A stretch of DNA of 64,000 bases from positions 244,896 through 308,895 of the IMG/VR virus record IMGVR_UViG_3300012988_000016. One strand, written 5' to 3'. Both the position numbers and the translations under genes were made by a program. This document shows positions 2,363 through 63,827 of the stretch, in pieces; position 1 is the stretch's first letter; each line of letters starts with the position of its first letter. Below the pieces are notes generated by a model. The model did not search any database. It had not been told where the DNA came from and saw nothing but the letters and a program-made list of their open reading frames with translations.

Positions 2363-3258
2363 GGGGATGGTTGGTAGACCGTAAAATTGTTCACGAAGGA
2401 GCTCTTCTTAGGGTCCAACACATCATCCAACAACATGGTGAAATCCCCATTCTTGGTACGATTCCCATTGTTGATGAACCCACCTCTAATCCCAGAAGTG
2501 AACATCCATCGATGCTCGGCAGGGATCATTCGATCCAGCTTATCCCCTATACCGGCACCCAGTCTCAGTTGTTCGGCTCGCTTGGAACCAAAAATCAACG
2601 TATGGTCACGACGAACCAAATTATCCAATCGAGGCGGGCGTCCGTCATGAGCGTCGATCGCAGGAGCGAACAATGTGTTTTCAAAGCCGGCCCTAGGACG
2701 GTACCACCAGAATATCGGATCGGTGCTTTCACCCCGCATATCCTGCATATCAAAGCAACAAATGGCGATTGGCCATTCTGGATATAGACGCCCCAATTCG
2801 TCCAAGAAAGCCTCAGGGATATGGGGGCGTTTGTTGGACGGAACTTCTTTCAACGCTAGATTCAAACCAGCCGCTGAATTGGACAGCGCTACCGTATAGG
2901 CACCGGAGTCAATGATCTCGAAGGCTACTGCACCCAACACATCTTCGTCATCGTCTTCACTCAAAGAGAAGCTTCTGGAAAAGCTTTTCTGCTTGGGTTT
3001 AAGATGCTCGATCGCTTGATGGTATTCAGACAAGATGTCTTTGAAGCCGCTCGCATCCACCACATTAGCCGGACCCAATGAACCCAGGGCAGGGATGGGT
3101 AGGATCATGGCATTCGGGCCTCGCCTGTAGGCCGTCACACTATTTTGATAACCCAGGACGTGGACTGTCTCAACCCCATCTTCTGTGGGATGATCCACTT
3201 CAGCTGAATAGATGACGGTGTTGGAAAGCTCAGTACCAGATTCGATGACACAACACAT
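2359..3258 (-). CDS. conserved hypothetical protein (possibly DUF2330-like)
   Basis: 299 aa with HVLGYQN...GPNAMILPIP; class B motif 9 nt upstream. Confidence 0.7.
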   Translation of the reverse strand: MCCVIESGTELSNTVIYSAEVDHPTEDGVETVHVLGYQNSVTAYRRGPNAMILPIPALGSLGPANVVDASGFKDILSEYHQAIEHLKPKQKSFSRSFSLSEDDDEDVLGAVAFEIIDSGAYTVALSNSAAGLNLALKEVPSNKRPHIPEAFLDELGRLYPEWPIAICCFDMQDMRGESTDPIFWWYRPRAGFENTLFAPAIDAHDGRPPRLDNLVRRDHTLIFGSKRAEQLRLGAGIGDKLDRMIPAEHRWMFTSGIRGGFINNGNRTKNGDFTMLLDDVLDPKKSSFVNNFTVYQPSP

Positions 3259-3264
3259 GACAGG

Positions 3265-3753
3265 TCATACACCACCGAAAGGGACCTTGTGCGGGGGTTG
3301 CCAATAGTTTGGCCAGTTCTCGATCAGTCGGGTAAGACAGTAATCCATGTGCTCAATCACACTAAGAGGTACTTGATGCACATTCCTAGCATGGCTGACC
3401 TCTACCGGACATTCCAGCAACACCAACTCTGGAAAATGCCCAAAAGCCGACGCTATCTGAACGTAAGGCGCAAGATCGTACAACATCACATTGGTGTTAT
3501 CGACCACAACCGTCGATTCTCTAGACAATGGAGTGGTGGTCCGATAATAGTGCATGGGGGTGGACACCAGATTGACGAACTTGCGCAAACAAGCCCCATG
3601 AGCCAAACTCCGATCCTCTATTTCAAAGCTGTATCCACCTGGACCTTCATGCCAATGATCGGCACTGCAAATCGAAACGTCCCCCCAAGTGTTTCGCTTG
3701 ATCCAAGTAGATTTCCCAGCGCCTGGTAGCCCAATCAAAATCACCACTCTCAT
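3265..3753 (-). CDS. P-loop kinase (AAA_33/polynucleotide kinase-like)
   Basis: Walker A GLPGAGKS, SAD, VVVDNTN and RNVH lid motif. Confidence 0.85.
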   Translation of the reverse strand: MRVVILIGLPGAGKSTWIKRNTWGDVSICSADHWHEGPGGYSFEIEDRSLAHGACLRKFVNLVSTPMHYYRTTTPLSRESTVVVDNTNVMLYDLAPYVQIASAFGHFPELVLLECPVEVSHARNVHQVPLSVIEHMDYCLTRLIENWPNYWQPPHKVPFGGV

Positions 3754-3780
3754 GGTGAGGCATTACACCAAATCCTGGAC

Positions 3781-4080
3781 TCAAGGCTTCGGAAGTGGGT
3801 CTGCTTTGACGAACCAGCTGACACCCCAGCAAGAGTAGTGATCTCCCGAACAGGTGCAGTAGTAGGCCAGCGGGTCACCCGAACTATCTAGCGGCACAGG
3901 AGTGTTGTGGGCACCGAACGCACAGGTGTCAGCCGTCTGAGGGTCACACTTGAAAGTGCCGTAGTTGAAATCAGCCGCATCATGCAGATAGCAGGAGTCT
4001 GGGACGGCTGGCTTCTGGTCAGGATCCTGACCTGAACATGAGGTTAGTACTAGGAACGCTAAAATGATGGTTTTACACAT
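3781..4080 (-). CDS. Cys-rich lipoprotein
   Basis: Signal peptide with lipobox LTSC; several Cys in the mature part; class A motif at 34 nt. Confidence 0.7.
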   Translation of the reverse strand: MCKTIILAFLVLTSCSGQDPDQKPAVPDSCYLHDAADFNYGTFKCDPQTADTCAFGAHNTPVPLDSSGDPLAYYCTCSGDHYSCWGVSWFVKADPLPKP

Positions 4081-4086
4081 ACCATC

Positions 4087-4114
4087 TAGAACGGAGCAAG
4101 GAAATGAAAGTTAA
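4087..4114 (-). promoter_or_regulatory. class A promoter-like motif inside an inverted repeat
   Basis: TTAACTT-N12-TCCGTTCTA-N6-ATG(4080); 14/15 inverted repeat 4088-4102/4117-4131. Confidence 0.75.
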
Positions 4115-4136
4115 GGTCCCTGCTCCGTTCTCAACG

Positions 4137-4928
4137 TCAACTTTCCCAGGTGGGGGTCGACCAGGCTTCGGGCCACGAACGTGTGGCGGGGGATGCTTGG
4201 TTCTTATCCTTGGTCAAACCTTGATCCCGCATCTTCGCAGCAACCAGGCGGTCGGCCTCCACATCTGAGCCGTTGTAGCGTGAGACCTGCTCCTTATTGG
4301 GGTTCTTCTGACCTTCCTTGAGGGTCAAAAAGCCGCATTCGATCGCTCTCTCAAGAGCAGCGATCTTCATAGGAGATCCGTTCCGTAGGATGACCTGTTC
4401 CTTCCCATCATAGTAGATCTCAGAGTCTTTCAAAAAGGTCAGCTGAGAGTGGGCGGCGGTTCCAGTTACCCAGGAATGAACAAATTCTCTGGCTACCAGA
4501 TAAATGGTATAGACGGCACTCTGGGTTCCCTCTGACCTCTTAATCTGGGTCCAATCGACATCACGTGGGTACATGAACCCCGCTTGAGAGGTACGATCTT
4601 CGGACAACCATCTCCCCTGATATACCTCTCCGTACAGTTTTACCGTACCATGCAGCTTATAGTTTCCAGCATGAGTCCTGACCACCGTACCATCTGGCAG
4701 GGTTTCGGGGAGTTTGGTAGGTTGTTTACCGTAGAAGCCTGCACGACGGGCTCGGATGCGTCGACCCAAAGCCACTACGACTTCTGGATTCTCGGCCCTG
4801 GCTCCAGGCGCACATGCATACGAGATAGCGGCCAGATGTAGGTCTTGAACACCATAACTGGGGCAGTCGGCCCATCCAAGGATTTGACCATCAGCGTCTT
4901 GTTCACCACAACATTCGCATTTAGACAT
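4137..4928 (-). CDS. hypothetical protein
   Basis: Start MSKCECC 9 nt after GGTGTA. Confidence 0.65.
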   Translation of the reverse strand: MSKCECCGEQDADGQILGWADCPSYGVQDLHLAAISYACAPGARAENPEVVVALGRRIRARRAGFYGKQPTKLPETLPDGTVVRTHAGNYKLHGTVKLYGEVYQGRWLSEDRTSQAGFMYPRDVDWTQIKRSEGTQSAVYTIYLVAREFVHSWVTGTAAHSQLTFLKDSEIYYDGKEQVILRNGSPMKIAALERAIECGFLTLKEGQKNPNKEQVSRYNGSDVEADRLVAAKMRDQGLTKDKNQASPATRSWPEAWSTPTWES

Positions 4929-4945
4929 GATGACTCCTACACCAA

Positions 4946-6081: not shown

Positions 6082-6101
6082 CTTGCCTCAATACACCGAA
6101 G

Positions 6102-6948: not shown

Positions 6949-6986
6949 GTTTGGCCTTACACCACTGGTGTAGGGGAAAGCATCGA

Positions 6987-11188: not shown

Positions 11189-11422
11189 CAAGCGTCTTCT
11201 ACACCGATTGGACGGGTGCTGGCGACCCCCAGACAGTCAGGACAGGTCTCCAGCTCAGATCGGAAGCTATAGAGCCCACCATCACAACGATAGACCCCTT
11301 CAGGTAGCGGTACGGGTTCAAACATACCCCCACCCAACATAGTGACTCAGACCAGTACATCGAAAGGTGACGTAGGGTTGTGAGGCATAGTCACACCCAT
11401 GGATCGGGTCTAGCTCGGCCAT
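11188..11422 (-). pseudogene. apparently frameshifted small Cys/His protein
   Basis: 235 nt = 78 codons + 1; deleting one G of the G5 run (11327-11331) joins two reading frames. Confidence 0.45.
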
Positions 11423-12014: not shown

Positions 12015-12033
12015 GTGACACCTTTACACCAGC

Positions 12034-12883: not shown

Positions 12884-12903
12884 TAGGCAAACATACACCG
12901 GAA

Positions 12904-14833: not shown

Positions 14834-14880
14834 GATAGACCTCTACACCGATGGAATGTTTGGTGTAGAGGTCTATCATG
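14831..14880. promoter_or_regulatory. perfect 19-bp inverted repeat holding two divergent class B motifs and both start codons
   Basis: CATGATAGACCTCTACACC-N12-GGTGTAGAGGTCTATCATG. Confidence 0.85.
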
Positions 14881-17102: not shown

Positions 17103-17489
17103 TCATACACCGTCAATGCTCAATTTTTTCAACCCTAGGGTGTTGATGTAACCGCCAGTAACCCAGCACTCTCGGTCGTCCCCACCACGATGCAAGACAA
17201 CCATCAACTTTTGACCCTTAGTCAACAGGACCGGCGCCCCTCGATCATCGAACTCGACTCTACATACAAAATATCCGTCCCACAGGCTAGGGCAAGCCAC
17301 CTCCATCCCTTTCAAAAGATCCTGCGTGGCTGGAATCGTATGTTCGACGTCTGGCACACCTTCAACCATCAGGTGGATAGGAGATCCCATATACTCCTTT
17401 ACACACCAACCAATGGTCGGAGCGGCTGTGGGATCTGCACTCAAAACAATAATCGGGGTGCTGACAGGCAGTTTTTCACTGGAGGTCAT
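17103..17489 (-). CDS. hypothetical protein
   Basis: 128-aa ORF. Confidence 0.55.
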   Translation of the reverse strand: MTSSEKLPVSTPIIVLSADPTAAPTIGWCVKEYMGSPIHLMVEGVPDVEHTIPATQDLLKGMEVACPSLWDGYFVCRVEFDDRGAPVLLTKGQKLMVVLHRGGDDRECWVTGGYINTLGLKKLSIDGV

Positions 17490-18338: not shown

Positions 18339-18706
18339 GTGAGTTGGAAATGTGAGATCTTATCACCTTCGTAGACGGCCGAGACGTAACCCCATTGATT
18401 GCGTGGTTGCACTCCTATCAAGCCGTTGAGGATCCCCAACAAACCTACGGCCGGAGAGCTATCTCTCAAGGCTCCGATCTGTGTGGTGGGATGATTGACC
18501 AATTCAGGATTGGCGAACACCCGCTGTTCGCAGAGATTGGTGATCGCCTCGGGGTCAAGAGCCAACACCTCATTCAGATAGGTGATGACCTCGGTCGCCA
18601 GTTTGACTTTCTCTTCTTCGGTCCGATCCAGATGAGGCTGCATAGCCTTCAATACACCGAAGTATTGAGCAATTGACGGACCTTTGGCGGCACCAAAGCG
18701 TTCCAC
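18335..18706 (-). CDS. conserved phage hypothetical protein
   Basis: LNEVLALDPEAI...HPT...VGLLGILNGL. Confidence 0.65.
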   Translation of the reverse strand: MERFGAAKGPSIAQYFGVLKAMQPHLDRTEEEKVKLATEVITYLNEVLALDPEAITNLCEQRVFANPELVNHPTTQIGALRDSSPAVGLLGILNGLIGVQPRNQWGYVSAVYEGDKISHFQLT

Positions 18707-19411: not shown

Positions 19412-19510
19412 CGTGTTCCTCTAATCTTTAGCAGGCGACATCCAAGTACACCCACTACCAACACGATGCAAAATACCACTGTGGCTGAGCTGAAGATGAT
19501 GGGGTACATG

Positions 19511-19970: not shown

Positions 19971-20031
19971 TCGGTCAGCTTACACCAAGTTGTGTTACAG
20001 TGTGGTTGTGATCATTCCAGGGGCGGAATGT

Positions 20032-29991: not shown

Positions 29992-30186
29992 TTACACCAG
30001 GCAGATCAGCTGTTTGAGGCGATTACGAACCGTCCGCAACTTGGCTCCAGGCTGACCATTGATCCACATATAGGTGCTGTTATGGTCTCCGTCAGTCACG
30101 ATACCGTTCCGCTTGGCTAGCTCCAACACAGCTTCCGCCTCAGGCGTGACGATCCCGTGAAATTCGTAGCCCACCAAACGAGCCAT
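29992..30186 (-). CDS. hypothetical protein
   Basis: Tiles with its neighbours. Confidence 0.55.
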   Translation of the reverse strand: MARLVGYEFHGIVTPEAEAVLELAKRNGIVTDGDHNSTYMWINGQPGAKLRTVRNRLKQLICLV

Positions 30187-31451: not shown

Positions 31452-31670
31452 CTACACCGCTCCGATCTCAGCCGTGGTCAGATCTTCCACTGCTTCTGAG
31501 CAGGCGAACCATCGTTGCTGCTCCAATGGGGACAGTTCCTCCCAGGGTGGGGACAACGGTCTGACGGGAGCTAACCCCACCCGTTCTTCTACCGTCTGAT
31601 AGGTGCGGTACGCCTCATAGGCTGTTTGAGCATAGCGAAGCGCATGCTGGTATACCGTCTCAGAATCCAT
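31452..31670 (-). CDS. hypothetical protein
   Basis: AYEAY...PPWEELSP. Confidence 0.6.
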   Translation of the reverse strand: MDSETVYQHALRYAQTAYEAYRTYQTVEERVGLAPVRPLSPPWEELSPLEQQRWFACSEAVEDLTTAEIGAV

Positions 31671-33563: not shown

Positions 33564-33579
33564 GCTGGGCTATACACCA

Positions 33580-34434: not shown

Positions 34435-34485
34435 AGCAGCTATACACCGAACCAAAGAAACGGTGTATAGCGCAGGAAAGTGTCC

Positions 34486-35736: not shown

Positions 35737-35771
35737 CCAGGTCATTTACACCCGTTGGTGTATGGTCAAGA

Positions 35772-36515: not shown

Positions 36516-36986
36516 CTATACACCGCTGATTCGGAAAGTCAGCCGCTTGGCCAGCTCAAAACCCTTCTGGGTCATCCTGGCTTCACTGACGTCTTGTCCG
36601 TTAGCCTCATTGGTATCTTGGCGATGTTCAATCAGTTCCAACTCGACCAATTTCTTGGCCTGACGAGACTCCCCAGGGAGGACCTCTACCCAACAGGTTC
36701 TGGAATCAGGATGACAGCCGTCGGCTTCTTCGAACAAGCTGATCAACAGCTTCTTCTGAGGCTTAGTGAGCTTGACTAGAGGCGAAGGGGTGGCGTCCAG
36801 TTGAGCCTCGTTTAGCTTCTCGGCGATGAATTGGGCTAGTTTGGGGCCCTCTACGTAGCAAAGGAAGCGTGCTGGACGAGACTTGCTGGTAGCGAACACT
36901 GCATCCCATAAGACGGTAGTCCTGGGCATCAACTGTTGGCCAGCTTCCGCCGTCTCATCCGAGAAAAGAAAATTGGGTTGAGTCAT
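36516..36986 (-). CDS. hypothetical protein, possible C-terminal winged helix
   Basis: LTKPQKKLL...KLVELELIE...RMTQKG; class A motif 36993-37020. Confidence 0.65.
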   Translation of the reverse strand: MTQPNFLFSDETAEAGQQLMPRTTVLWDAVFATSKSRPARFLCYVEGPKLAQFIAEKLNEAQLDATPSPLVKLTKPQKKLLISLFEEADGCHPDSRTCWVEVLPGESRQAKKLVELELIEHRQDTNEANGQDVSEARMTQKGFELAKRLTFRISGV

Positions 36987-38789: not shown

Positions 38790-38819
38790 CTTGGTCACGG
38801 TCGTAACTTCAGAACGTCG

Positions 38820-39431: not shown

Positions 39432-39491
39432 CCGTTGTCTCCTTTAGGGACGGTTGGCCCACCCTACACCAATCGGTGTACTGAAAGCCAG

Positions 39492-43532: not shown

Positions 43533-43787
43533 CTATACACCAGCTGATTTGCAGCAGTGGTTAGCTGGAACGTGGCTCTGAACCGACACCGTTGCCCGAC
43601 ATGGCTGCAATATCTCAAGCAGAGGCCGTGTCGGGTGGACCTGGTCCCAAATCTGCAGACATTCGGTACAATACTGATGAGGGTAGAAGACGGGCTGATT
43701 GGGCCAAATCACCCTATCGTGAATCCACACATCTTCACACCAAGAACCATCTTTAGTGCCGTCGGTTCGAAGATGATAGGTTGTCAT
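43533..43787 (-). CDS. small Cys/His protein
   Basis: Coupled start MTTYHL. Confidence 0.5.
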   Translation of the reverse strand: MTTYHLRTDGTKDGSWCEDVWIHDRVIWPNQPVFYPHQYCTECLQIWDQVHPTRPLLEILQPCRATVSVQSHVPANHCCKSAGV

Positions 43788-44470: not shown

Positions 44471-44492
44471 CCTGTTCTTTACACCACCCTGG

Positions 44493-48985: not shown

Positions 48986-49020
48986 CCAACAATCTACACC
49001 ATCAGACCAAACAAGATACT

Positions 49021-50489: not shown

Positions 50490-50508
50490 GCGGGTCCTCT
50501 ACACCACC

Positions 50509-50889
50509 CTACTGGAACAACACCCAATAGTAGACCGGCAACAGGTCAGGACCATCATCATGCCGTCGACTCACACACGTCTGTAGGTCATCCCCACACA
50601 TCAGACCGCCACTACACCAATGAACCCCATCCCGACACCAAGATAACCGGTCCACACATGTCAGGTCAGGTGCACACACCCGCCCACCCGTGCACCAATG
50701 CTGCCCGTCAGCACACCATTGGACCGATGTGACGCATTGCTGGCTATCAGGCGTACATACCTTCCCATGCGGACATAGATGCTGACCATCAGCACATGTG
50801 ACGTCCATCACCGGAGGAGGAGGAGGAGTGGGGTCGGCCTGACAAGACAGCAATACCAAACAGATGGCGAAAAGACAACGTTTACTCAT
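50509..50889 (-). CDS. lipoprotein with three Cys-rich repeats
   Basis: LLSC lipobox; CxDGxHxCxxGxxCxxDxxxCV three times. Confidence 0.75.
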   Translation of the reverse strand: MSKRCLFAICLVLLSCQADPTPPPPPVMDVTCADGQHLCPHGKVCTPDSQQCVTSVQWCADGQHWCTGGRVCAPDLTCVDRLSWCRDGVHWCSGGLMCGDDLQTCVSRRHDDGPDLLPVYYWVLFQ

Positions 50890-51932: not shown

Positions 51933-52003
51933 AGGGTGGTTCTACACCGAGGGATGGTGATGGGCAGGCTTAAGCGGTTGGCAGTTGGGCCGTATGGTCT
52001 GGC

Positions 52004-53874: not shown

Positions 53875-54315
53875 TCACTTTACACCGATGACGGTCCCAC
53901 ACCACATGAATTCCTGCATGTTGGGGACCTTTTTGGCCAAGGCTTGGATCAAGCTGACCACACGGCCGTAGGTCATTGCATCTTGTAGATGACGGACACC
54001 GACCGGCTGTTGCTTGATCGTGTAGTAGAGGTCATCGTAGAACACTACTTCGACGACCCTGGTTTGGCCGCTGTAGCACCATACTTGTGCGATCTGGCGG
54101 GGTTCTTGATCGGTTGGCCCGTGGACCCAATCATCCTGATTGAGGATCCCTTCAGCCGTCTCTTGGATCAGTTTGAGTGAGTAGCGTGTGGCTTTTAGCG
54201 GCTCTCTGCTGCCAGGGCAACCGAAACCATCAGCTCCGATGTGGTTGCAGATCTTACCCCCATAGATGTGTTGATCAGTCTTGCAGACGGGACAGGTGAC
54301 TAGGTGGCGTTCCAT
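53875..54315 (-). CDS. hypothetical protein with N-terminal zinc finger
   Basis: CPVC...H...CPGS; start MERHLV. Confidence 0.6.
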   Translation of the reverse strand: MERHLVTCPVCKTDQHIYGGKICNHIGADGFGCPGSREPLKATRYSLKLIQETAEGILNQDDWVHGPTDQEPRQIAQVWCYSGQTRVVEVVFYDDLYYTIKQQPVGVRHLQDAMTYGRVVSLIQALAKKVPNMQEFMWCGTVIGVK

Positions 54316-57059: not shown

Positions 57060-57307
57060 CTGGTGGTACCTATCGGCCAGCCGACCAAGACGTTACTTGG
57101 TGTAAGGCCTGCATGGTGAAAATCTTTCTAAGGGTGTTGGGCGAAGACCATTACGCCGAACACATGGTCTCCCGAGTTCCCGGTCTTAACGAGCTGGTGG
57201 CTAGGGATGACGGTTCCTATCTGGTCAAAACCGTCTGTCATCACGTAGACCCTGTGGAGGGTGAAGTGGTGGCGACGGTCCTAATTGAGAGGCCCCAGCG
57301 AACATGA
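57056..57307 (+). CDS. hypothetical protein
   Basis: Coupled ORF. Confidence 0.5.
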   Translation: MTGGTYRPADQDVTWCKACMVKIFLRVLGEDHYAEHMVSRVPGLNELVARDDGSYLVKTVCHHVDPVEGEVVATVLIERPQRT

Positions 57308-58024: not shown

Positions 58025-58097
58025 CTGCTTTCACAGCTCGTTTTGACCCGAACGAGCTGTAGGGCTGGTGTAAGTGAGGGGATGAAAGGAGGTTCTC

Positions 58098-58337: not shown

Positions 58338-58373
58338 TCAATCAAGGGCAACGGAGTCATGACCCACAGCCCC

Positions 58374-58465: not shown

Positions 58466-58538
58466 TTGCGGCTAGTTCAACAGGAAGAGCGACCCTTGTT
58501 AAAAGGGAGAGAAGTGGGTTCGAGGCCCACGCCGTGAG
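58466..58538 (+). tRNA. atypical tRNA-like gene (anticodon loop GTTAA, Asn-like)
   Basis: Acceptor TTGCGGC/GCCGTGA, TA, D GTTC/GAGC, CCCTT-GTTAA-AAGGG, T GTGGG-TTCGAGG-CCCAC. Confidence 0.7.
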
Positions 58539-58541
58539 CAA

Positions 58542-58745
58542 ATGGCACAACTGACCGAAGAACGGCGAGCCTACTACGAGAAAGCGATCCTCGACTACGA
58601 ACAGTTCCTGGCCCGTCCCCATCCAGAGCACTTCTACAGCAAACCGATCAAGTTCCCCGCCAACTTCGACCCTAAGCGGACCAACCATACCCACATCCTC
58701 GCCCTGATCCAAGACGCCAAAGAACAGCTTGAACCAAATGGCTAA
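58542..58745 (+). CDS. hypothetical protein
   Basis: 67-aa ORF right after the tRNA-like pair. Confidence 0.55.
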   Translation: MAQLTEERRAYYEKAILDYEQFLARPHPEHFYSKPIKFPANFDPKRTNHTHILALIQDAKEQLEPNG

Positions 58746-58950
58746 GTGCCGCTTCTGCCATGCCCCATCTGGCCAGCCTCACGATCGGACCATCCCACAC
58801 GGCGATCCATTCAACCGGAACTTCGTTGGCGATGTGGCCCAATGCGGTTGCAGGTGGGAGCGACAACCAGGCTATGGAGACGTGCTGATCTTATGCCCGA
58901 TCCACAGTGAGATCAATCGAATTGAGTATCTCAATACTCAATCTAGCTAG
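58738..58950 (+). CDS. small Cys/His protein
   Basis: CRFC...CGC...CPIH. Confidence 0.55.
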   Translation: MAKCRFCHAPSGQPHDRTIPHGDPFNRNFVGDVAQCGCRWERQPGYGDVLILCPIHSEINRIEYLNTQSS

Positions 58951-58970
58951 TTTGGTGTAAGATTTGGATC

Positions 58971-59345
58971 ATGAAACGTAGCCCCGCCATCCTCCACATA
59001 GCTCAAGATCTACAGTGGACCCCTGAGGATGTCCTCACGCCCATCGAATCCGCCTACCAACGCCTCAAACTGGCGGGCCTCCACGTTCACCTATGTGACG
59101 ATCGACTGATCGGAGGCTCTCACTACGATGACTCGGATCATCGTATCCGTATGGTGCTGAACGGCTTCATGATCGCTCCCGAGGGAACGGGCTATCGGCT
59201 CAAGAGGGCATCCGACGGTCAGACGGACGGCATAGGGTGCCTGACGCTCGATCAAGCCATCAGGTTGGTGATCGATACGATCCAGCCTCAGCCGAATATT
59301 GAGGCCCCACCCAGACCCCCTCAAAAAGGCCCACAGCTCTATTAA
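58971..59345 (+). CDS. hypothetical protein
   Basis: Class B motif 11 nt upstream. Confidence 0.6.
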   Translation: MKRSPAILHIAQDLQWTPEDVLTPIESAYQRLKLAGLHVHLCDDRLIGGSHYDDSDHRIRMVLNGFMIAPEGTGYRLKRASDGQTDGIGCLTLDQAIRLVIDTIQPQPNIEAPPRPPQKGPQLY

Positions 59346-59369
59346 CTTTCCCCCACCTGATCCGTTATA
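59342..59369 (+). promoter_or_regulatory. class A motif driving a tRNA-like gene
   Basis: TTAACTT-N12-TCCGTTATA; no ATG at +1; CCTAGCTG/CAGCTAGG hairpin follows. Confidence 0.7.
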
Positions 59370-59437
59370 TAGATCAGAATGCATGGAGCGCCTAGCTGGC
59401 CCAAGAGGCAGCTAGGACCGAGTCAAGTCTTGGCAGC

Positions 59438-59509
59438 GATACTTTGGTGTACTGGTGCACACACCCGATAAGGGTGGAGAGTTGGGTTCGAATCCCAGCA
59501 AGTATCCCA
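59438..59509 (+). tRNA. atypical tRNA-like gene (anticodon loop GATAA, Ile-like)
   Basis: Acceptor GATACTT/AAGTATC then CCA; D GTGT/GCAC; CACCC-GATAA-GGGTG; T GTTGGG-TTCGAAT-CCCAGC. Confidence 0.75.
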
Positions 59510-59510
59510 C

Positions 59511-59714
59511 ATGAAAGAACAACTAGCCGACATCCGAGATGCCTGGCTGCTACTCATCATGATAGTGTGGTGGGTGGTGACGCTGGAGTTCCAACGCTGG
59601 GAGATTCGACGTCAGTACGCTGGTCTGACCAGGCAGCTTGAGCAGAGTCAACTGAGGCTTCAACAACTCAAGCGAGGGGTCGGGACAGTAGCGGTACGTT
59701 ACCGTGTAGGCTGA
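59511..59714 (+). CDS. small membrane protein
   Basis: TM segment plus coiled coil. Confidence 0.55.
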   Translation: MKEQLADIRDAWLLLIMIVWWVVTLEFQRWEIRRQYAGLTRQLEQSQLRLQQLKRGVGTVAVRYRVG

Positions 59715-59937
59715 ACAACTATCGGCGGCCGACTGGCCTGGCTCCCCATAGCGAAGCTACGGGCCGGCCCACCAGCCGCCGCTAAATGACCGTCTGGCCG
59801 AACCGATCGATAATCCGTTCGGGCTGTACAGATCTCCCAAAATGGCGTATCCAGTATGCGCCCCGCTCAAAACGGCAAATAGGTCAAATCCCCCTATCTA
59901 TCCAAATTTTTATCGACCGGCCATTTTTGGCTCGATC

Positions 59938-59975
59938 AAAAAATCCGCATGGCTTCGCCGGGCGGCGGATTTTTT
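59938..59975. terminator. bidirectional terminator-like hairpin
   Basis: AAAAAATCCGC...GCGGATTTTTT. Confidence 0.55.
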
Positions 59976-59992
59976 CTGGGCCCGCATTTTCC

Positions 59993-60157
59993 ATGAAACC
60001 TGATCCCAAACAGCTGATTGCTAAGGTTGAGGCCGATCTAGAGAGGGAACGGATGCGGTTCGCCCTATTGACCAAACAGCATCTGGCCAAGGTAGCGAGG
60101 CTGAAGAAGCGGATGGTTCGACTGCAAGAGCAATCTGGTCAAGAGTGGTGGCGTTGA
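59993..60157 (+). CDS. small coiled-coil protein
   Basis: Probable start MKPDPK. Confidence 0.5.
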   Translation: MKPDPKQLIAKVEADLERERMRFALLTKQHLAKVARLKKRMVRLQEQSGQEWWR

Positions 60158-60169
60158 CGCTCGATACTG

Positions 60170-60554
60170 TCAGCCAAATGCTGGGTCGAGCCGTCGCAAC
60201 AGTCCCAACATCCAGTCGATGAAGGACTGTTGCGATAGCCCTTTGAGGGCGATCCGTTCCCCGAATCTGGTACATTCGAGCCATCGGTTATCGTCAGAGA
60301 GGGTCAGGTTCAGCTGCAGGTCTCCCTCGGGGATGGGGATCGGCACATACGTTAGCTCGATCGCTCGTGGGTAGCTGCCTAGGATTTGGAGCCGCACTCC
60401 TTTGGCTGATAGGACCTAACGACTCAGCGATCTGCAGGACGGCCGGCCCCACTAGGTCGAACAGCATTCCTTCTGCCTGTGCTTGTTGATCGGAGCGAGC
60501 CTTCAGATACGCTTCACGCCCTTGGAGGAATTGGGCAACGGCTTTAAGGGACAT
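60170..60554 (-). pseudogene. possibly frameshifted gene (ORFs 60294-60554 and 60170-60397)
   Basis: Start at the palindromic class B site; a one-base shift near 60415 would join ...LQIAES to VLSAKGVRLQILG... Confidence 0.4.
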
Positions 60555-60593
60555 ACGGCCAATACACCAATTCTGGTGTATTGGCCGTATGTC
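60550..60593. promoter_or_regulatory. perfect 20-bp inverted repeat holding two divergent class B motifs and both start codons
   Basis: GACATACGGCCAATACACCA-attc-TGGTGTATTGGCCGTATGTC. Confidence 0.85.
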
Positions 60594-60810
60594 TACCAAA
60601 TACCTGTTGAGCCTCATACTGCTGCTTCAGGCATGTGGTGGCCGTGTTGACGGTGGGCCCGACCAGCCTTTCCAAACCCCTGGACCTACATCTATCTGTC
60701 GCGAAGGTGAGTTGCCCATCACATTGGAGCGTCTGACGCCTCAGCTCCGTGAAGAGTTGGAGGGGTGTAGGATGTTGGACCCGACCAAGTGGTGTTGTCC
60801 AACGGTGTAG
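60589..60810 (+). CDS. small Cys-rich lipoprotein
   Basis: LQAC lipobox followed by GG; ends WCCP. Confidence 0.7.
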   Translation: MSTKYLLSLILLLQACGGRVDGGPDQPFQTPGPTSICREGELPITLERLTPQLREELEGCRMLDPTKWCCPTV

Positions 60811-60818
60811 ACCCATCC

Positions 60819-61142
60819 ATGAAACCCACCACTACAGTTGCGATCGGTCTAGCCACCCTACTGGATGCGTTCCATTGTCTCGACACACGGGTGGAGGCGG
60901 TCTGGATCCATCCTGCCCACATGCCAGAGCTCAGAACTGACCCTGAGTACGACCCGATCGCCCAGATGTCGGTCATCCAACAAGTCAGTCAAGCTGGTGG
61001 AGGCAGGTTTGAAGGCTTGCTGTGGGGAGTCCGGATCCTAAGTTCCGAGTTGGTGCCTATGGGGCGAGCCTGTGTCTTGCTGGCAGGCTTTGAGGCCAGG
61101 TTGGTGTCGGGTGAGGGGTCGGTGCCTTTCATGATCCAATGA
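60819..61142 (+). CDS. stand-alone protein resembling a major-capsid-protein subdomain
   Basis: DAF...RVEAVWIHP...LR...GLLWGVRILSSELVPMGRACV; class B motif. Confidence 0.5.
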   Translation: MKPTTTVAIGLATLLDAFHCLDTRVEAVWIHPAHMPELRTDPEYDPIAQMSVIQQVSQAGGGRFEGLLWGVRILSSELVPMGRACVLLAGFEARLVSGEGSVPFMIQ

Positions 61143-61476
61143 ACTGGCGTAGCCTGATAGCTGCCAGTCGTCTTGACATCCAGGGTTCATTCACGAAACT
61201 GTATCGGCCGTCCATCAGTGTTATGGAGGCGATCATTTTAGATGTCCCATTGGGGTTCAGTTGCAGGATCTCAAACACGAACTGCCCATGCCAGCTACGG
61301 CTCGTTAGTAGACATCTCACGTTACGTAGTCCCGCCAGCTTGACCAAGCCGTCAATTTGCTGGATGGCTGTTGCCAACCATTCGTCTAGGAAACGTTCTT
61401 GGAATTGCTCGAACGTAAGCTCCCCAGAACGTATCTGATCATAGACCCTCCTAGCGTTCTTCGACTTGCGGGGCAT
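61129..61476 (-). CDS. hypothetical protein
   Basis: AAGGA RBS; 115 aa. Confidence 0.55.
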   Translation of the reverse strand: MPRKSKNARRVYDQIRSGELTFEQFQERFLDEWLATAIQQIDGLVKLAGLRNVRCLLTSRSWHGQFVFEILQLNPNGTSKMIASITLMDGRYSFVNEPWMSRRLAAIRLRQFIGS

Positions 61477-61960
61477 GGGGGTCCTTTACGCTGCTGAGGG
61501 GGCGTTCCCTGCAATACTGTTGCAACGCCCGTCTAGCTAGCTCATATGCCTGGAGGGCTGGGACCAGCCTAGGTTGCTTCACCCGACAGTAAGGCAGGTA
61601 GCTGTTTAGCTGCATGTCTCCAAATCGATCGGCCCAACTCAACACAGCTCCTTCGCTGCAATGGTTCCAAAGTTTGGTCTGTTCGACCAAACCTAGTCGT
61701 TTGAGCTGTTGGGCCAACGCCACGGTGGTCAGCTGGACCCTACAGACTACCTGCCTGGCTGGGGGTTCCAATGTGGCGAAGCGCTCCATGTAATCGACCA
61801 TGTTTTGGTGATTATCGAGCAGGTACTGCATGCTGGAGAGGAACTCAGGTTCGCCTAGTGGCGGGGTCCTGGGGTCTTTCGAGCCAGCCCAGGTGGGTAA
61901 GGCAATCGAGAGTACCGACAAACAGGTGAGGGCTTGGAGCATGGAGCGGCGGTTCATCAT
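61451..61960 (-). CDS. exported protein with Tat-like signal
   Basis: MNRRSML...AWA-type signal; class B motif. Confidence 0.6.
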   Translation of the reverse strand: MMNRRSMLQALTCLSVLSIALPTWAGSKDPRTPPLGEPEFLSSMQYLLDNHQNMVDYMERFATLEPPARQVVCRVQLTTVALAQQLKRLGLVEQTKLWNHCSEGAVLSWADRFGDMQLNSYLPYCRVKQPRLVPALQAYELARRALQQYCRERPLSSVKDPHAPQVEER

Positions 61961-62010
61961 TTGGGCTTTACACCGGTTATCTTTTATCCGGAAGGGCCGT
62001 TGGTGTCTAT

Positions 62011-62307
62011 ATGTCGATGAATCCCACCATCCAAATTTTCGGCCGAACCCTCGACCTGATCCGCCTGGAGTCTAAGTACGATGACCAGATCCAGTTGGGG
62101 GTCTACCGGACCCCTGCCGGTCAGTACCCTAGGATTGAGGTTAATTGGTTCACCCATGTGGGTCAACCTGACTATTTGAATCTTTCGGTCCGACTAGCCA
62201 AGGATCTTGGAGTGGGATCGTATGGGGAATCGATCAAAGAGTTGGAGCAACGGCTCAAGAAAGAATTCAGTCTCTACCGAACCATCGAAGCCGAGTTGTT
62301 GGGCTGA
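62011..62307 (+). CDS. hypothetical protein, TIxxxGRxL family
   Basis: TIQIFGRTL; class A variant at 34 nt. Confidence 0.65.
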   Translation: MSMNPTIQIFGRTLDLIRLESKYDDQIQLGVYRTPAGQYPRIEVNWFTHVGQPDYLNLSVRLAKDLGVGSYGESIKELEQRLKKEFSLYRTIEAELLG

Positions 62308-62309
62308 CC

Positions 62310-62337
62310 TTAACTTCTCCACCTGGCATCCGTTCTA
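62310..62337 (+). promoter_or_regulatory. class A promoter-like motif
   Basis: TTAACTT-N12-TCCGTTCTA-N6-ATG(62344). Confidence 0.8.
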
Positions 62338-62343
62338 CCAGGT

Positions 62344-62484
62344 ATGAAACAAACAATCTCGCTACTGGGTGATGTGCTCGCTCTCTCGTGTTTGGTGGCT
62401 GCTGTCCCTTTCATGTTGGGCATGAAGGCTTACCGGAAACTGACTGGTAAGAAGCCCGCTCGCCCGATCAACATTTTCTTCTGA
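62344..62484 (+). CDS. 46-aa membrane peptide (not in ORF track)
   Basis: MKQTISLLGDVLALSCLVAAVPFMLGMKAYRK... Confidence 0.65.
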   Translation: MKQTISLLGDVLALSCLVAAVPFMLGMKAYRKLTGKKPARPINIFF

Positions 62485-62495
62485 AGGAGATCCAG

Positions 62496-62696
62496 ATGCG
62501 AAACCATTTCCGAAGTTCTCGTCTGACCTTGGTCGAAATCCTAATCGGCCTCGCCATCTGTTTGACCGTAGCTGGTGCGATCTATAGCCTGACCTACATG
62601 GCCGTCAATGACTGTCATGACGGGCTATGGGTCCGTGACGCGATGGGGATGCCTCGTTGTATTCATACTCAAAACGTCAACCTACTGGTCCACTGA
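62496..62696 (+). CDS. prepilin-like mini protein
   Basis: AAGGAG RBS; basic leader then LTLVEILIGLAI; two C-terminal Cys. Confidence 0.6.
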   Translation: MRNHFRSSRLTLVEILIGLAICLTVAGAIYSLTYMAVNDCHDGLWVRDAMGMPRCIHTQNVNLLVH

Positions 62697-62986
62697 TGAC
62701 TCAACATACCTTGCGTGTCCATACCCGAAATGGGATCAAGACCTACACGGTCGACGGGGATAATACGGTAGATGCCATCTTTTTAGGTGAGCGACTCGCC
62801 ACCAGCGGGCCTGGTATCATGGTGGTGTGGTACAGAGATGGTGTGGCGTATCATCGTTGGATTGGGCAATCAGTTGGGGTGTGTTGGGTTGAAGTCAACG
62901 TGGGGCCGCAAGAACCCAACCGAGCTGAATCCTGGACTTTTTCTGGAGAGGTTAGGCCTTCTAAGCTTCCGTCTGACCCCACATGA
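62696..62986 (+). CDS. hypothetical protein
   Basis: Coupled start MTQHTL. Confidence 0.55.
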   Translation: MTQHTLRVHTRNGIKTYTVDGDNTVDAIFLGERLATSGPGIMVVWYRDGVAYHRWIGQSVGVCWVEVNVGPQEPNRAESWTFSGEVRPSKLPSDPT

Positions 62987-63315
62987 CCAAAATGGACCAG
63001 TTCATCAAAATACCTCATCCAACCAATCGGGTCTGGCCTGGCACTCCGTATCATGTATTGATGACGGTTGAGCAGGCCTATGAGGATGGCCGTCAGACGG
63101 GCCTCAACTGGGCGGCAGCTGACCAATACGTCCCTGGCGGACCGTCGGTCGGACCAGGGCAACACATCGGATTCTCGGCGTTGGAGGACCAGGAGCGGCG
63201 GGTCCACCGTGAATGGATGCGGGGTTGGCATGCTGGCTTTCGGCAGCAATACCCCAAGGCGGCCTTACGGCCGCAATGGTACCGAAGATTCGATTTTGAT
63301 CTATCCGACGTCTGA
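62983..63315 (+). CDS. hypothetical protein
   Basis: AYEDG...G...W.RGW..G. Confidence 0.6.
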   Translation: MTKMDQFIKIPHPTNRVWPGTPYHVLMTVEQAYEDGRQTGLNWAAADQYVPGGPSVGPGQHIGFSALEDQERRVHREWMRGWHAGFRQQYPKAALRPQWYRRFDFDLSDV

Positions 63316-63332
63316 TCGGTGTATAGACCCTA

Positions 63333-63412
63333 GTCAGCCGTTTTGGATGGTCCAGAGCTGCTGATCCAAACCCCTCCTAGAGACCGTGCGGCTCATACTA
63401 GGAGGGGTTTGG
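63333..63412 (+). ncRNA. candidate two-hairpin small RNA
   Basis: Orphan GGTGTA at 63318; hairpin GTCAGC...GCTGAT then a perfect 15-bp inverted repeat 63366-63380/63398-63412. Confidence 0.4.
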
Positions 63413-63425
63413 TGTATGTTGGCTG

Positions 63426-63827
63426 ATGAGTCAACATCAGAAATTCAAGTTCTTCAGTTTTCACCAAACCTACGACGTAGACCAGCAGATCTCCAAGCAG
63501 GTGAACGAGTGGGTCCAGACCAACCAGGTGCAGGCTTGCTCGATTGGGGTTGAGTACGTGGAACGCCTCAATTGTTTGCTGGTCAGTCTGGGTTACCTGC
63601 CTGGCATCAGATTGACCACTCCAGGCGGGGGACAGGTCGGAAGCACCAGTTTTCCGGTGGAGCTTCATACGGTCAAATTGGGCCGACTATCGTTGGGCAA
63701 GTTGGATACCCTGGAGAGTCTACTCGAAGCTGAGGCTCAAAAGTTTGACGGGGTGATTTGCCACGAATTCTATGTCAACCAACTGAATGACGTGGTGGCG
63801 GTATTTTTGGTTCAGAGTAAGGCTTAA
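63426..63827 (+). CDS. conserved hypothetical protein
   Basis: Class B motif 9 nt upstream; SIGVEY...SLGY...ICHEFY. Confidence 0.7.
   Translation: MSQHQKFKFFSFHQTYDVDQQISKQVNEWVQTNQVQACSIGVEYVERLNCLLVSLGYLPGIRLTTPGGGQVGSTSFPVELHTVKLGRLSLGKLDTLESLLEAEAQKFDGVICHEFYVNQLNDVVAVFLVQSKA

What the first reader, a model, noticed from the sequence alone, without database searches (positions are those of the whole stretch)
3258..63426. Class B: compact GGTGTA element 8-11 nt before about 31 start codons, a second promoter class
Seen upstream of starts at 3258, 3753, 4928, 6081, 6948, 11188, 12014, 12883, 14833, 14878, 17096, 19970, 31442, 33563, 34434, 35736, 35772, 36509, 39492, 43526, 44470, 48985, 50489, 51932, 53871, 58971, 60554, 60589, 60819, 61960 and 63426. 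A rough chance expectation is well under one (about 130 starts x 4 positions / 4096). Genes carry A or B but essentially not both. Back-to-back copies only 3-4 nt apart (6960, 35747, 39465) argue there is no -35 partner. It also explains why many upstream proteins end in GV* or V*. Inference: a single-box promoter analogous to T4 late or phiKZ-type phage RNAP promoters, again giving leaderless mRNAs and probably a different temporal class.
Basis: partly seen in the sequence, partly recalled or inferred. Interest (0 to 1): 0.72.

Follow-up and report, generated by a model that had tools for sequence, protein, structure and literature searches.

The report
Single-box leaderless promoter of a megaphage
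A 7-base box (YGGTGTA) 8-11 bases before about a quarter of this huge soil phage's start codons, and also before tRNA genes and a Cas9 tracrRNA, is most likely a one-element promoter that starts transcription at the ATG, so the mRNAs have no leader; the same box is used by related 380-530 kb phages.

Summary
All 31 listed starts have GGTGTA 8-11 nt upstream, and four more sites exist in the window. The window is the end of a 309-kb IMG/VR phage record. Genome-wide, 84 of 200 boxes are phased to an ATG, against about 2-3 per offset by chance.

The box is not a ribosome-binding site:
- Other genes of the phage use ordinary GGAG Shine-Dalgarno sites.
- The perfect anti-SD complement GGTGAT shows no phasing.
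- Boxes 19-45 nt from an ATG are followed by a separate SD.
- The box precedes non-coding genes: a predicted tracrRNA in this genome, and 7 of 159 tRNAs in three relatives.

It sits where a -10 element sits. In relative G003, 9 of 28 two-box promoters (GGTTAAGATC-N9-ctcaGGTGTA-N8/9-ATG) use GGTGTA as their downstream box. Nothing is conserved upstream of the class B box in four genomes. Tight divergent gene pairs have only 34-71 bp between their ATGs.

No phage RNA polymerase was found in the record or in five relatives. Relatives encode a divergent ECF-like sigma family, but none lies in this 65%-complete record. No transcript data could be obtained, so the start site is inferred.

Verdict: a real, clade-wide, -10-only promoter class giving leaderless mRNAs. 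It is a new variant of a known kind, and the factor that reads it is unknown.

The parts
3268..3273 (-). B box, gap 9 to ATG at 3258 (299 aa)
3764..3769 (-). B box, gap 10 to ATG at 3753 (162 aa)
4938..4943 (-). B box, gap 9 to ATG at 4928 (263 aa)
6092..6097 (-). B box, gap 10 to ATG at 6081 (86 aa)
6958..6963 (-). B box, gap 9 to ATG at 6948 (139 aa); back-to-back with 6967-6972
6967..6972 (+). B box of the divergent partner; nearest ATG at gap 14
11200..11205 (-). B box, gap 11 to ATG at 11188 (79 aa)
12025..12030 (-). B box, gap 10 to ATG at 12014 (110 aa)
12894..12899 (-). B box, gap 10 to ATG at 12883 (76 aa)
14844..14849 (-). B box, gap 10 to ATG at 14833 (349 aa, AAA ATPase); one arm of a perfect 19-nt inverted repeat 14831-14849/14862-14880 that includes spacer and ATG
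14862..14867 (+). B box, gap 10 to ATG at 14878 (113 aa); other arm of the 19-nt inverted repeat
17106..17111 (-). B box, gap 9 to ATG at 17096 (84 aa)
18653..18658 (-).
19447..19452 (-). GGTGTA (preceded by G, not Y) 35 nt before ATG at 19411 (141 aa), with an AGAGGA SD in between: candidate leadered form
19981..19986 (-). B box, gap 10 to ATG at 19970 (63 aa)
29993..29998 (-). B box 27 nt before ATG at 29965 (47 aa), with an AAGGAG SD in between: candidate leadered form
31453..31458 (-). B box, gap 10 to ATG at 31442 (338 aa, AAA ATPase)
33573..33578 (-). B box, gap 9 to ATG at 33563 (174 aa)
34443..34448 (-). B box, gap 8 to ATG at 34434 (284 aa); 11-nt inverted repeat with 34461-34471
35747..35752 (-). 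B box, gap 10 to ATG at 35736 (56 aa); back-to-back pair
35757..35762 (+). B box, gap 9 to ATG at 35772 (97 aa); back-to-back pair
36519..36524 (-). B box, gap 9 to ATG at 36509 (72 aa)
39465..39470 (-). B box 33 nt before ATG at 39431 (203 aa), with an AAAGGAG SD in between: leadered form; back-to-back with 39475-39480
39475..39480 (+). B box, gap 11 to ATG at 39492 (225 aa)
43536..43541 (-). B box, gap 9 to ATG at 43526 (93 aa)
44480..44485 (-). B box, gap 9 to GTG at 44470 (228 aa)
48995..49000 (-). B box, gap 9 to ATG at 48985 (92 aa)
50500..50505 (-). B box, gap 10 to ATG at 50489 (107 aa)
50613..50618 (-). GGTGTA, gap 11 to ATG at 50601, but only a 30-aa ORF: doubtful
51943..51948 (-). 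B box, gap 10 to ATG at 51932 (68 aa)
53881..53886 (-). B box, gap 9 to ATG at 53871 (64 aa)
57099..57104 (+).
58067..58072 (+). B box; ATG at gap 9 opens only 30 aa, while ATG at 58098 (gap 25, 72 aa) has a strong AAAGGAGG SD: probably the leadered form
58954..58959 (+). B box, gap 11 to ATG at 58971 (124 aa)
60563..60568 (-). B box, gap 8 to ATG at 60554 (86 aa); one arm of a perfect 20-nt inverted repeat 60550-60569/60574-60593
60575..60580 (+). B box, gap 8 to ATG at 60589 (73 aa); other arm of the 20-nt inverted repeat
60804..60809 (+). B box, gap 9 to ATG at 60819 (107 aa)
61969..61974 (-). B box, gap 8 to ATG at 61960 (169 aa)
63411..63416 (+). B box, gap 9 to ATG at 63426 (133 aa)

Best explanation
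YGGTGTA is a -10-type core promoter element that works without a -35 partner. A bacterial-type RNA polymerase opens the DNA at the box. It is most likely the host enzyme carrying a phage-specified or phage-modified sigma factor. It starts about 9-11 nt downstream, at or within a few bases of the A of the ATG. The mRNA therefore has no leader, or only a few bases of one, and no Shine-Dalgarno site, and is translated as a leaderless mRNA. The same box also drives tRNA genes and, in this genome, the tracrRNA of a phage Cas9 system. When it lies 19-45 nt from the ATG, the transcript has a leader with its own SD. Shown from sequence: the motif, its phasing, the lack of an upstream partner, its conservation across the clade, its presence before non-coding genes, and its use as the downstream box of two-box promoters in a relative. 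Inferred: the exact start site, the identity of the recognising factor, and the timing.
For: (1) Phasing and specificity. 84 of 200 boxes have an ATG at gap 8-11. Single-base variants and GGTGAT show no phasing.
(2) It is not the ribosome-binding site. The 1-100 kb core block uses GGAG-type SDs 6-9 nt before ATG or overlapping stop/start codons. GGAGGT and GGTGAT, the perfect complement of a standard 16S tail, show no phasing.
(3) Bimodal geometry. Gaps 8-14 carry an SD-like tetramer only rarely (8-15% at gaps 8-11). Gaps 15-20 are nearly empty. Gaps 21-45 often carry a GGAG SD 5-9 nt before the ATG (examples). Box-N8-24-GGAG/GAGG-N4-9-ATG occurs at 16 of 470 boxes (3.4%), against about 1.1% for 59 permuted hexamers.
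(4) Non-coding targets. A box with the full consensus at L019:5445-5450 has no ATG. It lies 12 nt before an anti-repeat to the CRISPR repeat, which is the 3rd-4th best of 51,276 genome windows. A nexus-like hairpin and an intrinsic terminator follow, about 100 nt upstream of cas9. In relatives, 7 of 159 tRNAs have the box within 30 nt upstream, against a mean of 1.15 for permuted hexamers. The gaps are 9, 10, 11, 14, 16, 21 and 5. They include the tRNA-Arg(cct) that heads a cluster in G002 and the tRNA-Arg(cct) of G004.
(5) -10 position. In G003, 28 promoters read GGTTAAGATC-N9-cTCA[C/G]GTGTA-N8/9-ATG, and 9 of them carry GGTGTA itself. The distance from upstream box to ATG is 28-29 nt in G000, G003 and G004, which fits initiation at the ATG.
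(6) No upstream information in four genomes. Divergent junctions of 34-71 bp carry A or B boxes on nearly all sides, with one exception at 60 bp.
(7) No excess of sigma-70-like promoters in window 30-50 kb: 8 found against 12.7 +/- 3.5 expected.
(8) Start codons. B starts are 136 ATG, 13 GTG and 0 TTG. Strong-SD starts are 142, 52 and 23. This fits the known AUG preference of leaderless initiation.
(9) C at -1 of the ATG in G002-G004 fits the usual pyrimidine -1 / purine +1 start-site preference.
(10) Clade-wide use. All five large relatives show 9-52 GGTGTA-N9-ATG sites against 0-4 for the control. The box is retained before orthologues at about 35-55% protein identity, for example the SNF2 helicase and the ClpX-like ATPase.
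(11) Pfam domains begin at residues 2-4 of the boxed ATG, for example the ClpX zinc finger, which confirms these starts.
Against: There are no transcript 5' ends. The four metatranscriptome runs I laid had no contigs on window 58001-64000. No sigma factor or RNA polymerase is detectable in the held 309 kb, so the reading factor is unknown. Many boxes sit 0-20 nt after a co-directional upstream gene, some overlapping its stop codon. This implies a promoter in front of almost every gene with read-through, an arrangement that would also suit an RNA-level signal. One tRNA (G002 tRNA-Gln) has the box only 5 nt upstream, which is too close for a start 9-10 nt downstream. The tracrRNA is a prediction: there was no Rfam match and no related Cas9 locus in the five large relatives searched to compare with. 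The box lacks the T at '-7' and the TG spacing of sigma-70 -10 elements, so no known recognition mode fits exactly.
Confidence: 0.7

Rival explanations
1. The box acts on the mRNA as a non-Shine-Dalgarno translation initiation signal, that is, a binding site for the ribosome or for a phage translation factor. The transcripts would start further upstream.
For: Fixed 8-11 nt spacing to the start codon resembles RBS spacing. Boxes precede consecutive co-directional genes and often overlap the upstream stop codon. GGTG is complementary to part of the standard 16S tail (textbook knowledge).
Against: The phage uses ordinary GGAG SDs elsewhere. GGTGAT, the perfect extended complement, is not phased. 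Pairing GGUG with CCAC would place the start codon about 5 nt too far away (inference from the standard 16S 3' end). Boxes occur before tRNAs and a tracrRNA. Distant boxes are followed by a separate SD. The box serves as the -10 element of two-box promoters in G003. In 34-bp divergent pairs, upstream promoters would have to lie inside the neighbouring gene, and nothing is conserved there.
Confidence: 0.06
2. The box is an RNA-processing signal. A phage or host endoribonuclease would recognise GGUGUA and cut about 9-10 nt downstream, creating leaderless mRNAs and trimmed tRNA or tracrRNA 5' ends from longer transcripts.
For: It would explain the box before both coding and non-coding genes, the serial boxes inside co-directional gene arrays, and the absence of a detectable sigma factor or polymerase in this record.
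Against: The box occupies the -10 slot at a fixed distance from a conserved upstream box in G003. Class A promoters of G000 occupy the same slot before other ATGs. Tight divergent pairs leave no upstream promoter. tRNA 5' ends are made by RNase P and need no such signal (established knowledge). No precedent is known to me for cleavage at a fixed distance downstream of a 6-nt site that generates start codons.
Confidence: 0.07
3. The box is the DNA site of a phage regulator, an operator or 'stoperator'-like element, that overlaps otherwise unrecognised promoters or blocks read-through at gene boundaries.
For: There are many oriented copies in short intergenic spaces and over stop codons. Some divergent pairs form long perfect palindromes. 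This resembles the oriented repressor sites of mycobacteriophage L5 (from memory).
Against: Six to seven informative bases are short for a repressor site. The strict phasing to the ATG, the ATG preference and the absence of an SD are not explained. No other promoter signal exists for these genes. The box replaces the -10 element in G003 two-box promoters.
Confidence: 0.1

Closest known systems
-10 motif next to ORFs that drives leaderless genes in Deinococcus-Thermus (and the leaderless-genome classes modelled by GeneMarkS-2)
   Same: A short promoter element sits at a fixed few-base distance from the start codon and there is no SD. A second set of genes in the same genome carries a GGAG RBS. 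The -35 element is dispensable (PMC12340547; PMC6028130). Here.
   Different: The sequence is YGGTGTA(nnG), not TANNNT, with no T at the last hexamer position. It is a phage-clade signal shared across genomes of 53-59% GC. It also drives tRNAs and a tracrRNA.
-35-independent phage promoters served by host RNA polymerase: Thermus phage P23-45 late (extended -10, gp39 switch), T4 middle (AsiA), T4 late TATAAATA (gp55). phiYS40 middle/late leaderless genes and phiEco32 gp36 TAATGTATA are cited from memory.
   Same: One downstream element suffices, and the host polymerase is redirected by a phage factor (PMC4124052). Leaderless phage genes are reported for phiYS40 (my recollection; the paper is not held). 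No phage polymerase was found here.
   Different: The consensus differs. The recognising factor is unknown here. The scale also differs: about a quarter of the genes, mostly in the variable accessory genome.
ECF-sigma promoters (AAC-type -35, CGT-type -10)
   Same: Class A of this clade has that layout: G000 cTTAACTT-N13-15-CCGTTCTA-N6-ATG, G002 GTATAGAA...GCGTTA, G004 GGTTGAAA...ACGTTGTAG. Relatives encode an ECF-like sigma family. In G003 the B box is the -10 part of such promoters.
   Different: Class B has no -35 element, whereas ECF sigmas normally require one (established knowledge). The link between the sigma family and either class is an inference.
Shine-Dalgarno sequence
   Same: It lies at a similar distance from the start codon.
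   Different: It is not complementary in register to a standard anti-SD. It coexists with true GGAG SDs. It is present before non-coding genes.

Membership tests
Leaderless-gene promoter architecture (-10 motif adjacent to ORF) | Conserved motif at a fixed short distance upstream of start codons | tested here: met
   Gaps 8/9/10/11 give 11/39/25/10 of 200 boxes. It is the top k-mer/offset signal.
Leaderless-gene promoter architecture (-10 motif adjacent to ORF) | No SD between motif and start codon, while other genes of the same genome carry an SD | tested here: met
   An SD-like tetramer is present in 8-15% of gap 8-11 sites. GGAG SDs are found in the core block and in leadered box genes.
Leaderless-gene promoter architecture (-10 motif adjacent to ORF) | Transcription start at, or within a few nt of, the start codon | not testable with these tools
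   No RNA contigs lie on the window. Indirect support comes from the 28-29 nt distance between -35 box and ATG in two-box promoters and from tRNA gaps of 9-16 nt.
Leaderless-gene promoter architecture (-10 motif adjacent to ORF) | Strong preference for AUG | tested here: met
   B starts are 136 ATG, 13 GTG and 0 TTG. Strong-SD starts are 142, 52 and 23. Caveat: the gene calls are my own crude ones.
Sigma-70 -10 / extended -10 element | TAnnnT hexamer (A at -11, T at -7), optionally TG one base upstream | tested here: not met
   After the TA only a G at +3 is enriched, and there is no T at the sixth position. TG abuts TA without the spacer base.
ECF-sigma promoter | Conserved -35 (AAC-type) at about 16-17 bp from a CGT-type -10 | tested here: not met
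   There is no information in the 45 nt upstream of the class B box in four genomes. The feature is met by class A promoters, and in G003 with GGTGTA as the -10.
T4 late promoter / gp55 system | TATAAATA at -10 | tested here: not met
   The consensus is YGGTGTA.
T4 late promoter / gp55 system | gp55-like truncated sigma plus gp33 and sliding-clamp activation | not tested
   Only Sigma70_r2, Sigma70_r4_2 and TIGR02937 were searched in G000, all negative. No gp55-specific model was used.
phiKZ-type / T7-type phage RNA polymerase promoter | Phage-encoded multisubunit (beta/beta') or single-subunit RNA polymerase | tested here: not met
   PF00562 gave no hit in G000 or G001-G005, four of which are complete. 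PF00940 gave no hit in G000. Very divergent polymerases could escape these models, and the PF00940 control rang nowhere.
Shine-Dalgarno site | Complementarity to the 16S 3' tail at 5-10 nt aligned spacing | tested here: not met
   Only GGUG can pair, and the TA is essential yet mismatched. GGTGAT and GGAGGT are not phased. The host 16S is unknown, so a standard tail is assumed; the phage's own GGAG SDs justify this.
Shine-Dalgarno site | Restricted to protein-coding genes | tested here: not met
   The box is found before a tracrRNA and before tRNAs.

The most novel reading that the evidence does not exclude
The box is read by a factor with no recognisable relative: a new kind of sigma or promoter-specificity subunit, or an unrecognised polymerase. 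A cosmopolitan clade of 380-530 kb phages would then run a portable 'plug-in' expression system, in which a 7-bp box plus an ATG needs no leader and no ribosome-binding site. This would let the clade express newly acquired accessory genes, tRNAs and even a captured CRISPR-Cas9 tracrRNA.
Probability: 0.2. Interest if true: 0.8.

Novelty: new variant of a known kind. Interest (0 to 1): 0.6.

Why it matters
If transcript mapping confirms it, three things follow.
- It gives a simple rule for finding gene starts and transcription units in a very widespread but uncultivated group of huge phages. More than 500 IMG/VR contigs share the capsid protein at 93-100% identity among the 80 listed. The existing call for the Cas9 here is 895 aa, against the 1020-aa ORF.
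- It shows that leaderless expression can be the main mode for the accessory genome of a phage whose core genes use normal ribosome-binding sites.
- It points to an unknown promoter-recognition factor worth isolating.
A 7-bp promoter that needs no 5' UTR would also be a compact expression part. The box in front of a predicted tracrRNA suggests how a phage rewires an acquired CRISPR system to its own transcription programme.

Tried and rejected
- Transcript evidence: an RNA-run search with the capsid gene found only runs holding 5-7% of the sampled words.
- Megablast of window 20-40 kb against the phage collection: no match.
- Sigma factor or polymerase in G000: Sigma70_r2, Sigma70_r4_2, TIGR02937, Rpb2_6 and T7-type RNAP were all negative. 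tblastn, HMM and phmmer searches with the relatives' sigma-like proteins were also negative.
- Fold of the relatives' sigma-like protein: an AlphaFold model (pLDDT 80, pTM 0.44) gave no significant PDB match for the whole chain. Only the inserted HNH-like domain was recognisable, and sigma E and sigma H ranked 18 and 21 with poor scores. The sigma assignment therefore rests on sequence: 19 of 25 members hit PF04542.
- tracrRNA: no Rfam match. blastn-short missed the imperfect anti-repeat, so duplex energies were used instead. No Cas9 relative was found in viral contigs or in the five relatives, so there was no comparative check.
- Host: the DNA polymerase atlas search was uninformative. Capsid relatives sit in MAGs labelled Lysinibacter, Actinomycetota, Altiarchaeales, Legionellales and Nitrospirae, which looks like mis-binning and gives at most a weak actinobacterial hint. 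The Cas9 is only 31-38% identical to named Cas9s; most named hits are Proteobacteria.
- TTGAC[AGT]-N16-19-TA[ATC]A-type host promoters, seen upstream of the sigma-like genes of G002 and G004, are too rare to form a class.
- Literature search for GGTGTA as a promoter or leaderless signal: nothing relevant.
- Chance or composition as the explanation was rejected.

Full report
WHAT THE WINDOW IS

The window is bases 244,896-308,895 of a 308,895-bp IMG/VR virus record (G000). CheckV estimates it at 65% complete, its GC is 52.8%, and it comes from a soil metagenome.

The record encodes:
- an HK97-type major head protein (phrog_2522), a head maturation protease and a baseplate J protein;
- a family-A DNA polymerase and a UvrD-like helicase;
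- a type II Cas9 with a CRISPR array.

The capsid protein is 93-100% identical among the best 80 of 504 related IMG/VR contigs. These include complete genomes with terminal repeats of 407-448 kb and a 529-kb record. This is therefore one member of a widespread clade of huge phages.

Bases 1-130 kb are a core of structural and replication genes, colinear with relatives. The remainder, including the window, is variable.

THE OBSERVATION

- GGTGTA occurs 60 times in the window, against 21.9 +/- 4.6 in shuffles.
- All 31 listed starts have the box 8-11 nt upstream on the correct strand. Four more sites exist.
- Genome-wide there are 200 boxes. ATGs lie at gaps 8/9/10/11 in 11/39/25/10 cases, against about 2-3 per offset elsewhere.
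- Among the related hexamers tested, only those that overlap the box (TGGTGT, GTGTAG) are phased. The single-base variants and GGTGAT are not.
- GGTGTA at gaps 9-10 is the strongest 6-mer/offset signal before ATGs in the genome.
- The consensus is Y-GGTGTA-nnG. There is no information in the 30-45 nt upstream, in four genomes.

No ATG carries both signals. Eighteen of the 84 boxes overlap an upstream stop codon as xV* or GV*.

IT IS NOT THE RIBOSOME-BINDING SITE

- In the 1-100 kb core block all 78 called genes are on the + strand, and almost none has an A or B box. They carry ordinary GGAG-type SDs 6-9 nt before the ATG, or overlap the previous gene's stop codon. The host therefore reads a normal SD.
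- GGAGGT and GGTGAT show no phasing. GGTGAT is the perfect complement of a standard 16S tail.
- Only GGUG of the box could pair with that tail. This would put the start codon about 5 nt beyond the usual aligned spacing. That step is an inference from the standard tail.
- The distance from the box to the next gene start is bimodal. Gaps 8-14 rarely carry an SD-like tetramer, gaps 15-20 are nearly empty, and gaps 21-45 often carry a GGAG SD 5-9 nt before the ATG. Examples in the window are 39465-, 19447- and 58067+. G002 has many more.
- Box-N8-24-GGAG/GAGG-N4-9-ATG is found at 16 of 470 boxes (3.4%) in G000 and G002. For 59 permuted hexamers the fraction is about 1.1%.

This is what a promoter with a start about 10 nt downstream predicts. 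A start codon at that point needs no SD. A leader of 5-10 nt is useless and is avoided. A longer leader needs its own SD.

THE BOX PRECEDES NON-CODING GENES

The tracrRNA in G000:
- cas9 is L019:5573-8635 and carries the HNH_4, RuvC_III and Cas9_a domains.
- It is followed by an array of 36-nt repeats.
- About 130 nt upstream of cas9, at L019:5445-5450, sits a box with the full consensus (tcGGTGTAtaG) and no ATG at gaps 8-11.
- Twelve nt after the box begins a 20-nt anti-repeat to the 5' part of the repeat. Counted by hand, it has 17 matches, one G-U pair, one mismatch and one bulge.
- A hairpin follows, then a strong intrinsic terminator about 100 nt from the predicted start.
- The anti-repeat ranks 3rd-4th among 51,276 genome windows for duplex energy with the repeat.
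This is the usual anatomy of a tracrRNA, and the box stands where its promoter should be.

The tRNAs in relatives:
- G002, G003 and G004 are complete genomes with 55, 53 and 51 tRNAs.
- Seven tRNAs have the box within 30 nt upstream on the same strand, at gaps 9, 10, 11, 14, 16, 21 and 5. The mean for permuted hexamers is 1.15.
- They include the tRNA-Arg(cct) that heads a tRNA cluster in G002, the tRNA-Arg(cct) of G004, and an amber-suppressor tRNA in G004.

In the window, a class-A-like promoter without an ATG (about 58303-58343) lies upstream of tRNA-Leu.

THE BOX SITS AT THE -10 POSITION

Each relative has its own two-box class.
- G002: GTATAGAA ... GCGTTA, 7-8 nt, ATG.
- G004: GGTTGAAA ... 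ACGTTGTAG, 4 nt, ATG.
- G003: gGGTTAAGATC, 9 nt, cTCA[C/G]GTGTA, 8-9 nt, ATG.
In G003, 9 of the 28 such promoters have GGTGTA itself as the downstream box.

The upstream hexamer ends 28-29 nt before the ATG in G000, G003 and G004. That is the geometry of a bacterial -35 element when transcription starts at the A of the ATG.

Class B is therefore the same downstream element used without the upstream one. The upstream boxes differ between phages, while GGTGTA is the same in all six genomes.

Further supporting points:
- Divergent junctions of 34-71 bp carry A or B boxes on nearly all sides; the one exception is an SD-type partner at 60 bp.
- Sigma-70-like promoters are not enriched in window 30-50 kb: 8 found against 12.7 +/- 3.5 expected.
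- In G002-G004 the base before the ATG is mostly C. This fits the usual pyrimidine -1 / purine +1 start preference.
- Boxed starts are 91% ATG and never TTG. Strong-SD starts are 65% ATG.
- Pfam domains begin at residues 2-4 of the boxed ATGs, for example the ClpX zinc finger and an RNA ligase behind a class A promoter.

WHO READS THE BOX

No multisubunit polymerase beta-subunit homologue (PF00562) is found in G000 or in five relatives, four of them complete. No T7-type polymerase is found in G000. A host polymerase is therefore the likely enzyme.

The relatives encode a family of about 350-420 aa proteins with these parts:
- an N-terminal Sigma70_r2 match (19 of 25 members at E <= 0.01, best 9.4e-7);
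- a central HNH-like zinc-finger insertion;
- a C-terminal LuxR/region-4-like helix-turn-helix.
Some are named 'sigma24 family' by JGI. The structure model did not give a significant whole-chain match.

The family fits the ECF-like layout of class A. Whether it also reads class B is unknown. No member lies in the held 309 kb of G000. The contig ends where tRNA genes begin, and in G002 the sigma gene lies about 12 kb from the tRNA block. It may therefore be in the missing third of the genome; that is an inference.

WHAT THE BOX DRIVES

In G000 the boxed genes include an SNF2 helicase, a ClpX-like ATPase, a transglycosylase, several AAA ATPases, a UDP-glucose dehydrogenase, and many small ORFs of unknown function.
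- By my crude calls, about 35 of roughly 116 window genes are boxed, and only 7 of 118 in the core.
- Only 10-14 of 58 boxed genes have homologues in a given relative. Where they do, the box is often retained, for example at the SNF2 helicase in G002 and G004 and the ClpX-like gene in G002 and G003.
The box is thus a portable signal for the accessory genome. Timing (early, middle or late) cannot be deduced.

RIVAL EXPLANATIONS

- An RNA-level translation signal is contradicted by the non-coding targets, the separate SDs and the G003 promoters.
- An RNA-processing signal would fit the non-coding targets. It would not fit the fixed distance to a -35 box or the tight divergent pairs.
- A regulator site of the 'stoperator' kind does not explain the phasing, the ATG preference or the lack of any other promoter.
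None of the three is excluded without 5'-end data. No such data could be obtained.

COMPARISON WITH WHAT IS KNOWN

The arrangement works like the '-10 motif next to the ORF' of Deinococcus-Thermus. There a TANNNT motif and a GGAG motif mark two sets of genes, and the former was shown experimentally to be the promoter of leaderless genes (PMC12340547). It also works like the -35-independent promoters to which phages redirect the host polymerase, as in P23-45 gp39 and T4 AsiA (PMC4124052). T4 gp55, phiEco32 gp36 and phiYS40 are cited from memory.

It is not a member of the sigma-70 -10 family: the TAnnnT test is not met. It is not a T4 late promoter, and it is not an SD.

I rate it a new variant of a known kind: a clade-specific, single-element, leaderless promoter with an unidentified reader.

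Noticed in passing
G000:205445-209740 (L019:5445-9740), outside the window: The phage carries a type II CRISPR-Cas9 system: a 1020-aa Cas9 (31-38% identical to named Cas9s, mostly from Proteobacteria), a predicted tracrRNA upstream of it, and an array of at least 9 intact plus several degenerate 36-nt repeats. I did not look for cas1 or cas2. None of five large relatives has this Cas9.
   Followed up: partly
window 58303-58465: A class-A-like two-box promoter (TTAACT, 15 nt, CCGTACTA, 6 nt, then A) without an ATG lies about 120 nt upstream of tRNA-Leu(taa) at 58466-58539. The stretch between has a T-arm-like GGGGTTCAACTCCCC, so it may hold a second tRNA-like gene that ARAGORN missed.
   Followed up: no
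window 59439-59509: ARAGORN calls an odd 'tRNA-Tyr(ata)' here. A full-consensus B box (59446-59451) lies inside its 5' end, and a GGGTTCGAATCC T-arm follows. This may be a truncated tRNA-like RNA driven by the box rather than a true tRNA.
   Followed up: no
window 14831-14880 and 60550-60593: Two divergent B-box pairs are perfect 19- and 20-nt inverted repeats that include the box, the spacer and both ATGs. Other back-to-back pairs are not. The cause is unknown: duplication of a promoter cassette, or a constraint on the spacer.
   Followed up: partly
window 21346-28686 (+): A 2446-aa ORF with collagen triple-helix repeats (residues about 1671-1728) and no other Pfam match. It is the largest gene of the record and has no A or B box.
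   Followed up: no
relatives: L103:619-1686:- (G002), L102:1339-2589:+ (G004); family P0121-P0189: A sigma-70/ECF-like protein family specific to this phage clade carries an HNH-like zinc-finger domain inserted between the region-2 and region-4-like parts. It is similar to the ZRANB3 HNH domain (E 5e-7 by profile).
   Followed up: partly
G002:35713-35804, G004:35459-35532 and 35791-35867: Relatives encode tRNAs with anticodon CTA (amber suppressors, which ARAGORN labels 'Pyl'). One of them lies 10 nt after a B box. I did not examine whether TAG is recoded in part of these genomes. ORFs of G000 look normal in code 11.
   Followed up: no
G003 genome-wide (e.g. G003:166065, 204275, 215618): In G003 the spacer of class B is itself conserved (GGTGTA-YGGTRAGGC-ATG), and G002 and G004 favour GG.C before the ATG. 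The G000 spacer shows only a G at +3. The element may therefore extend to the start site in some clade members.
   Followed up: partly
window 38767-38792 (-) and 38756-38761 (-): A strong intrinsic terminator is followed directly by a B box. The box overlaps the upstream element of a class-A-like promoter (GGTTAAC ... CCGTCTA), giving a tandem B+A arrangement before one gene.
   Followed up: no
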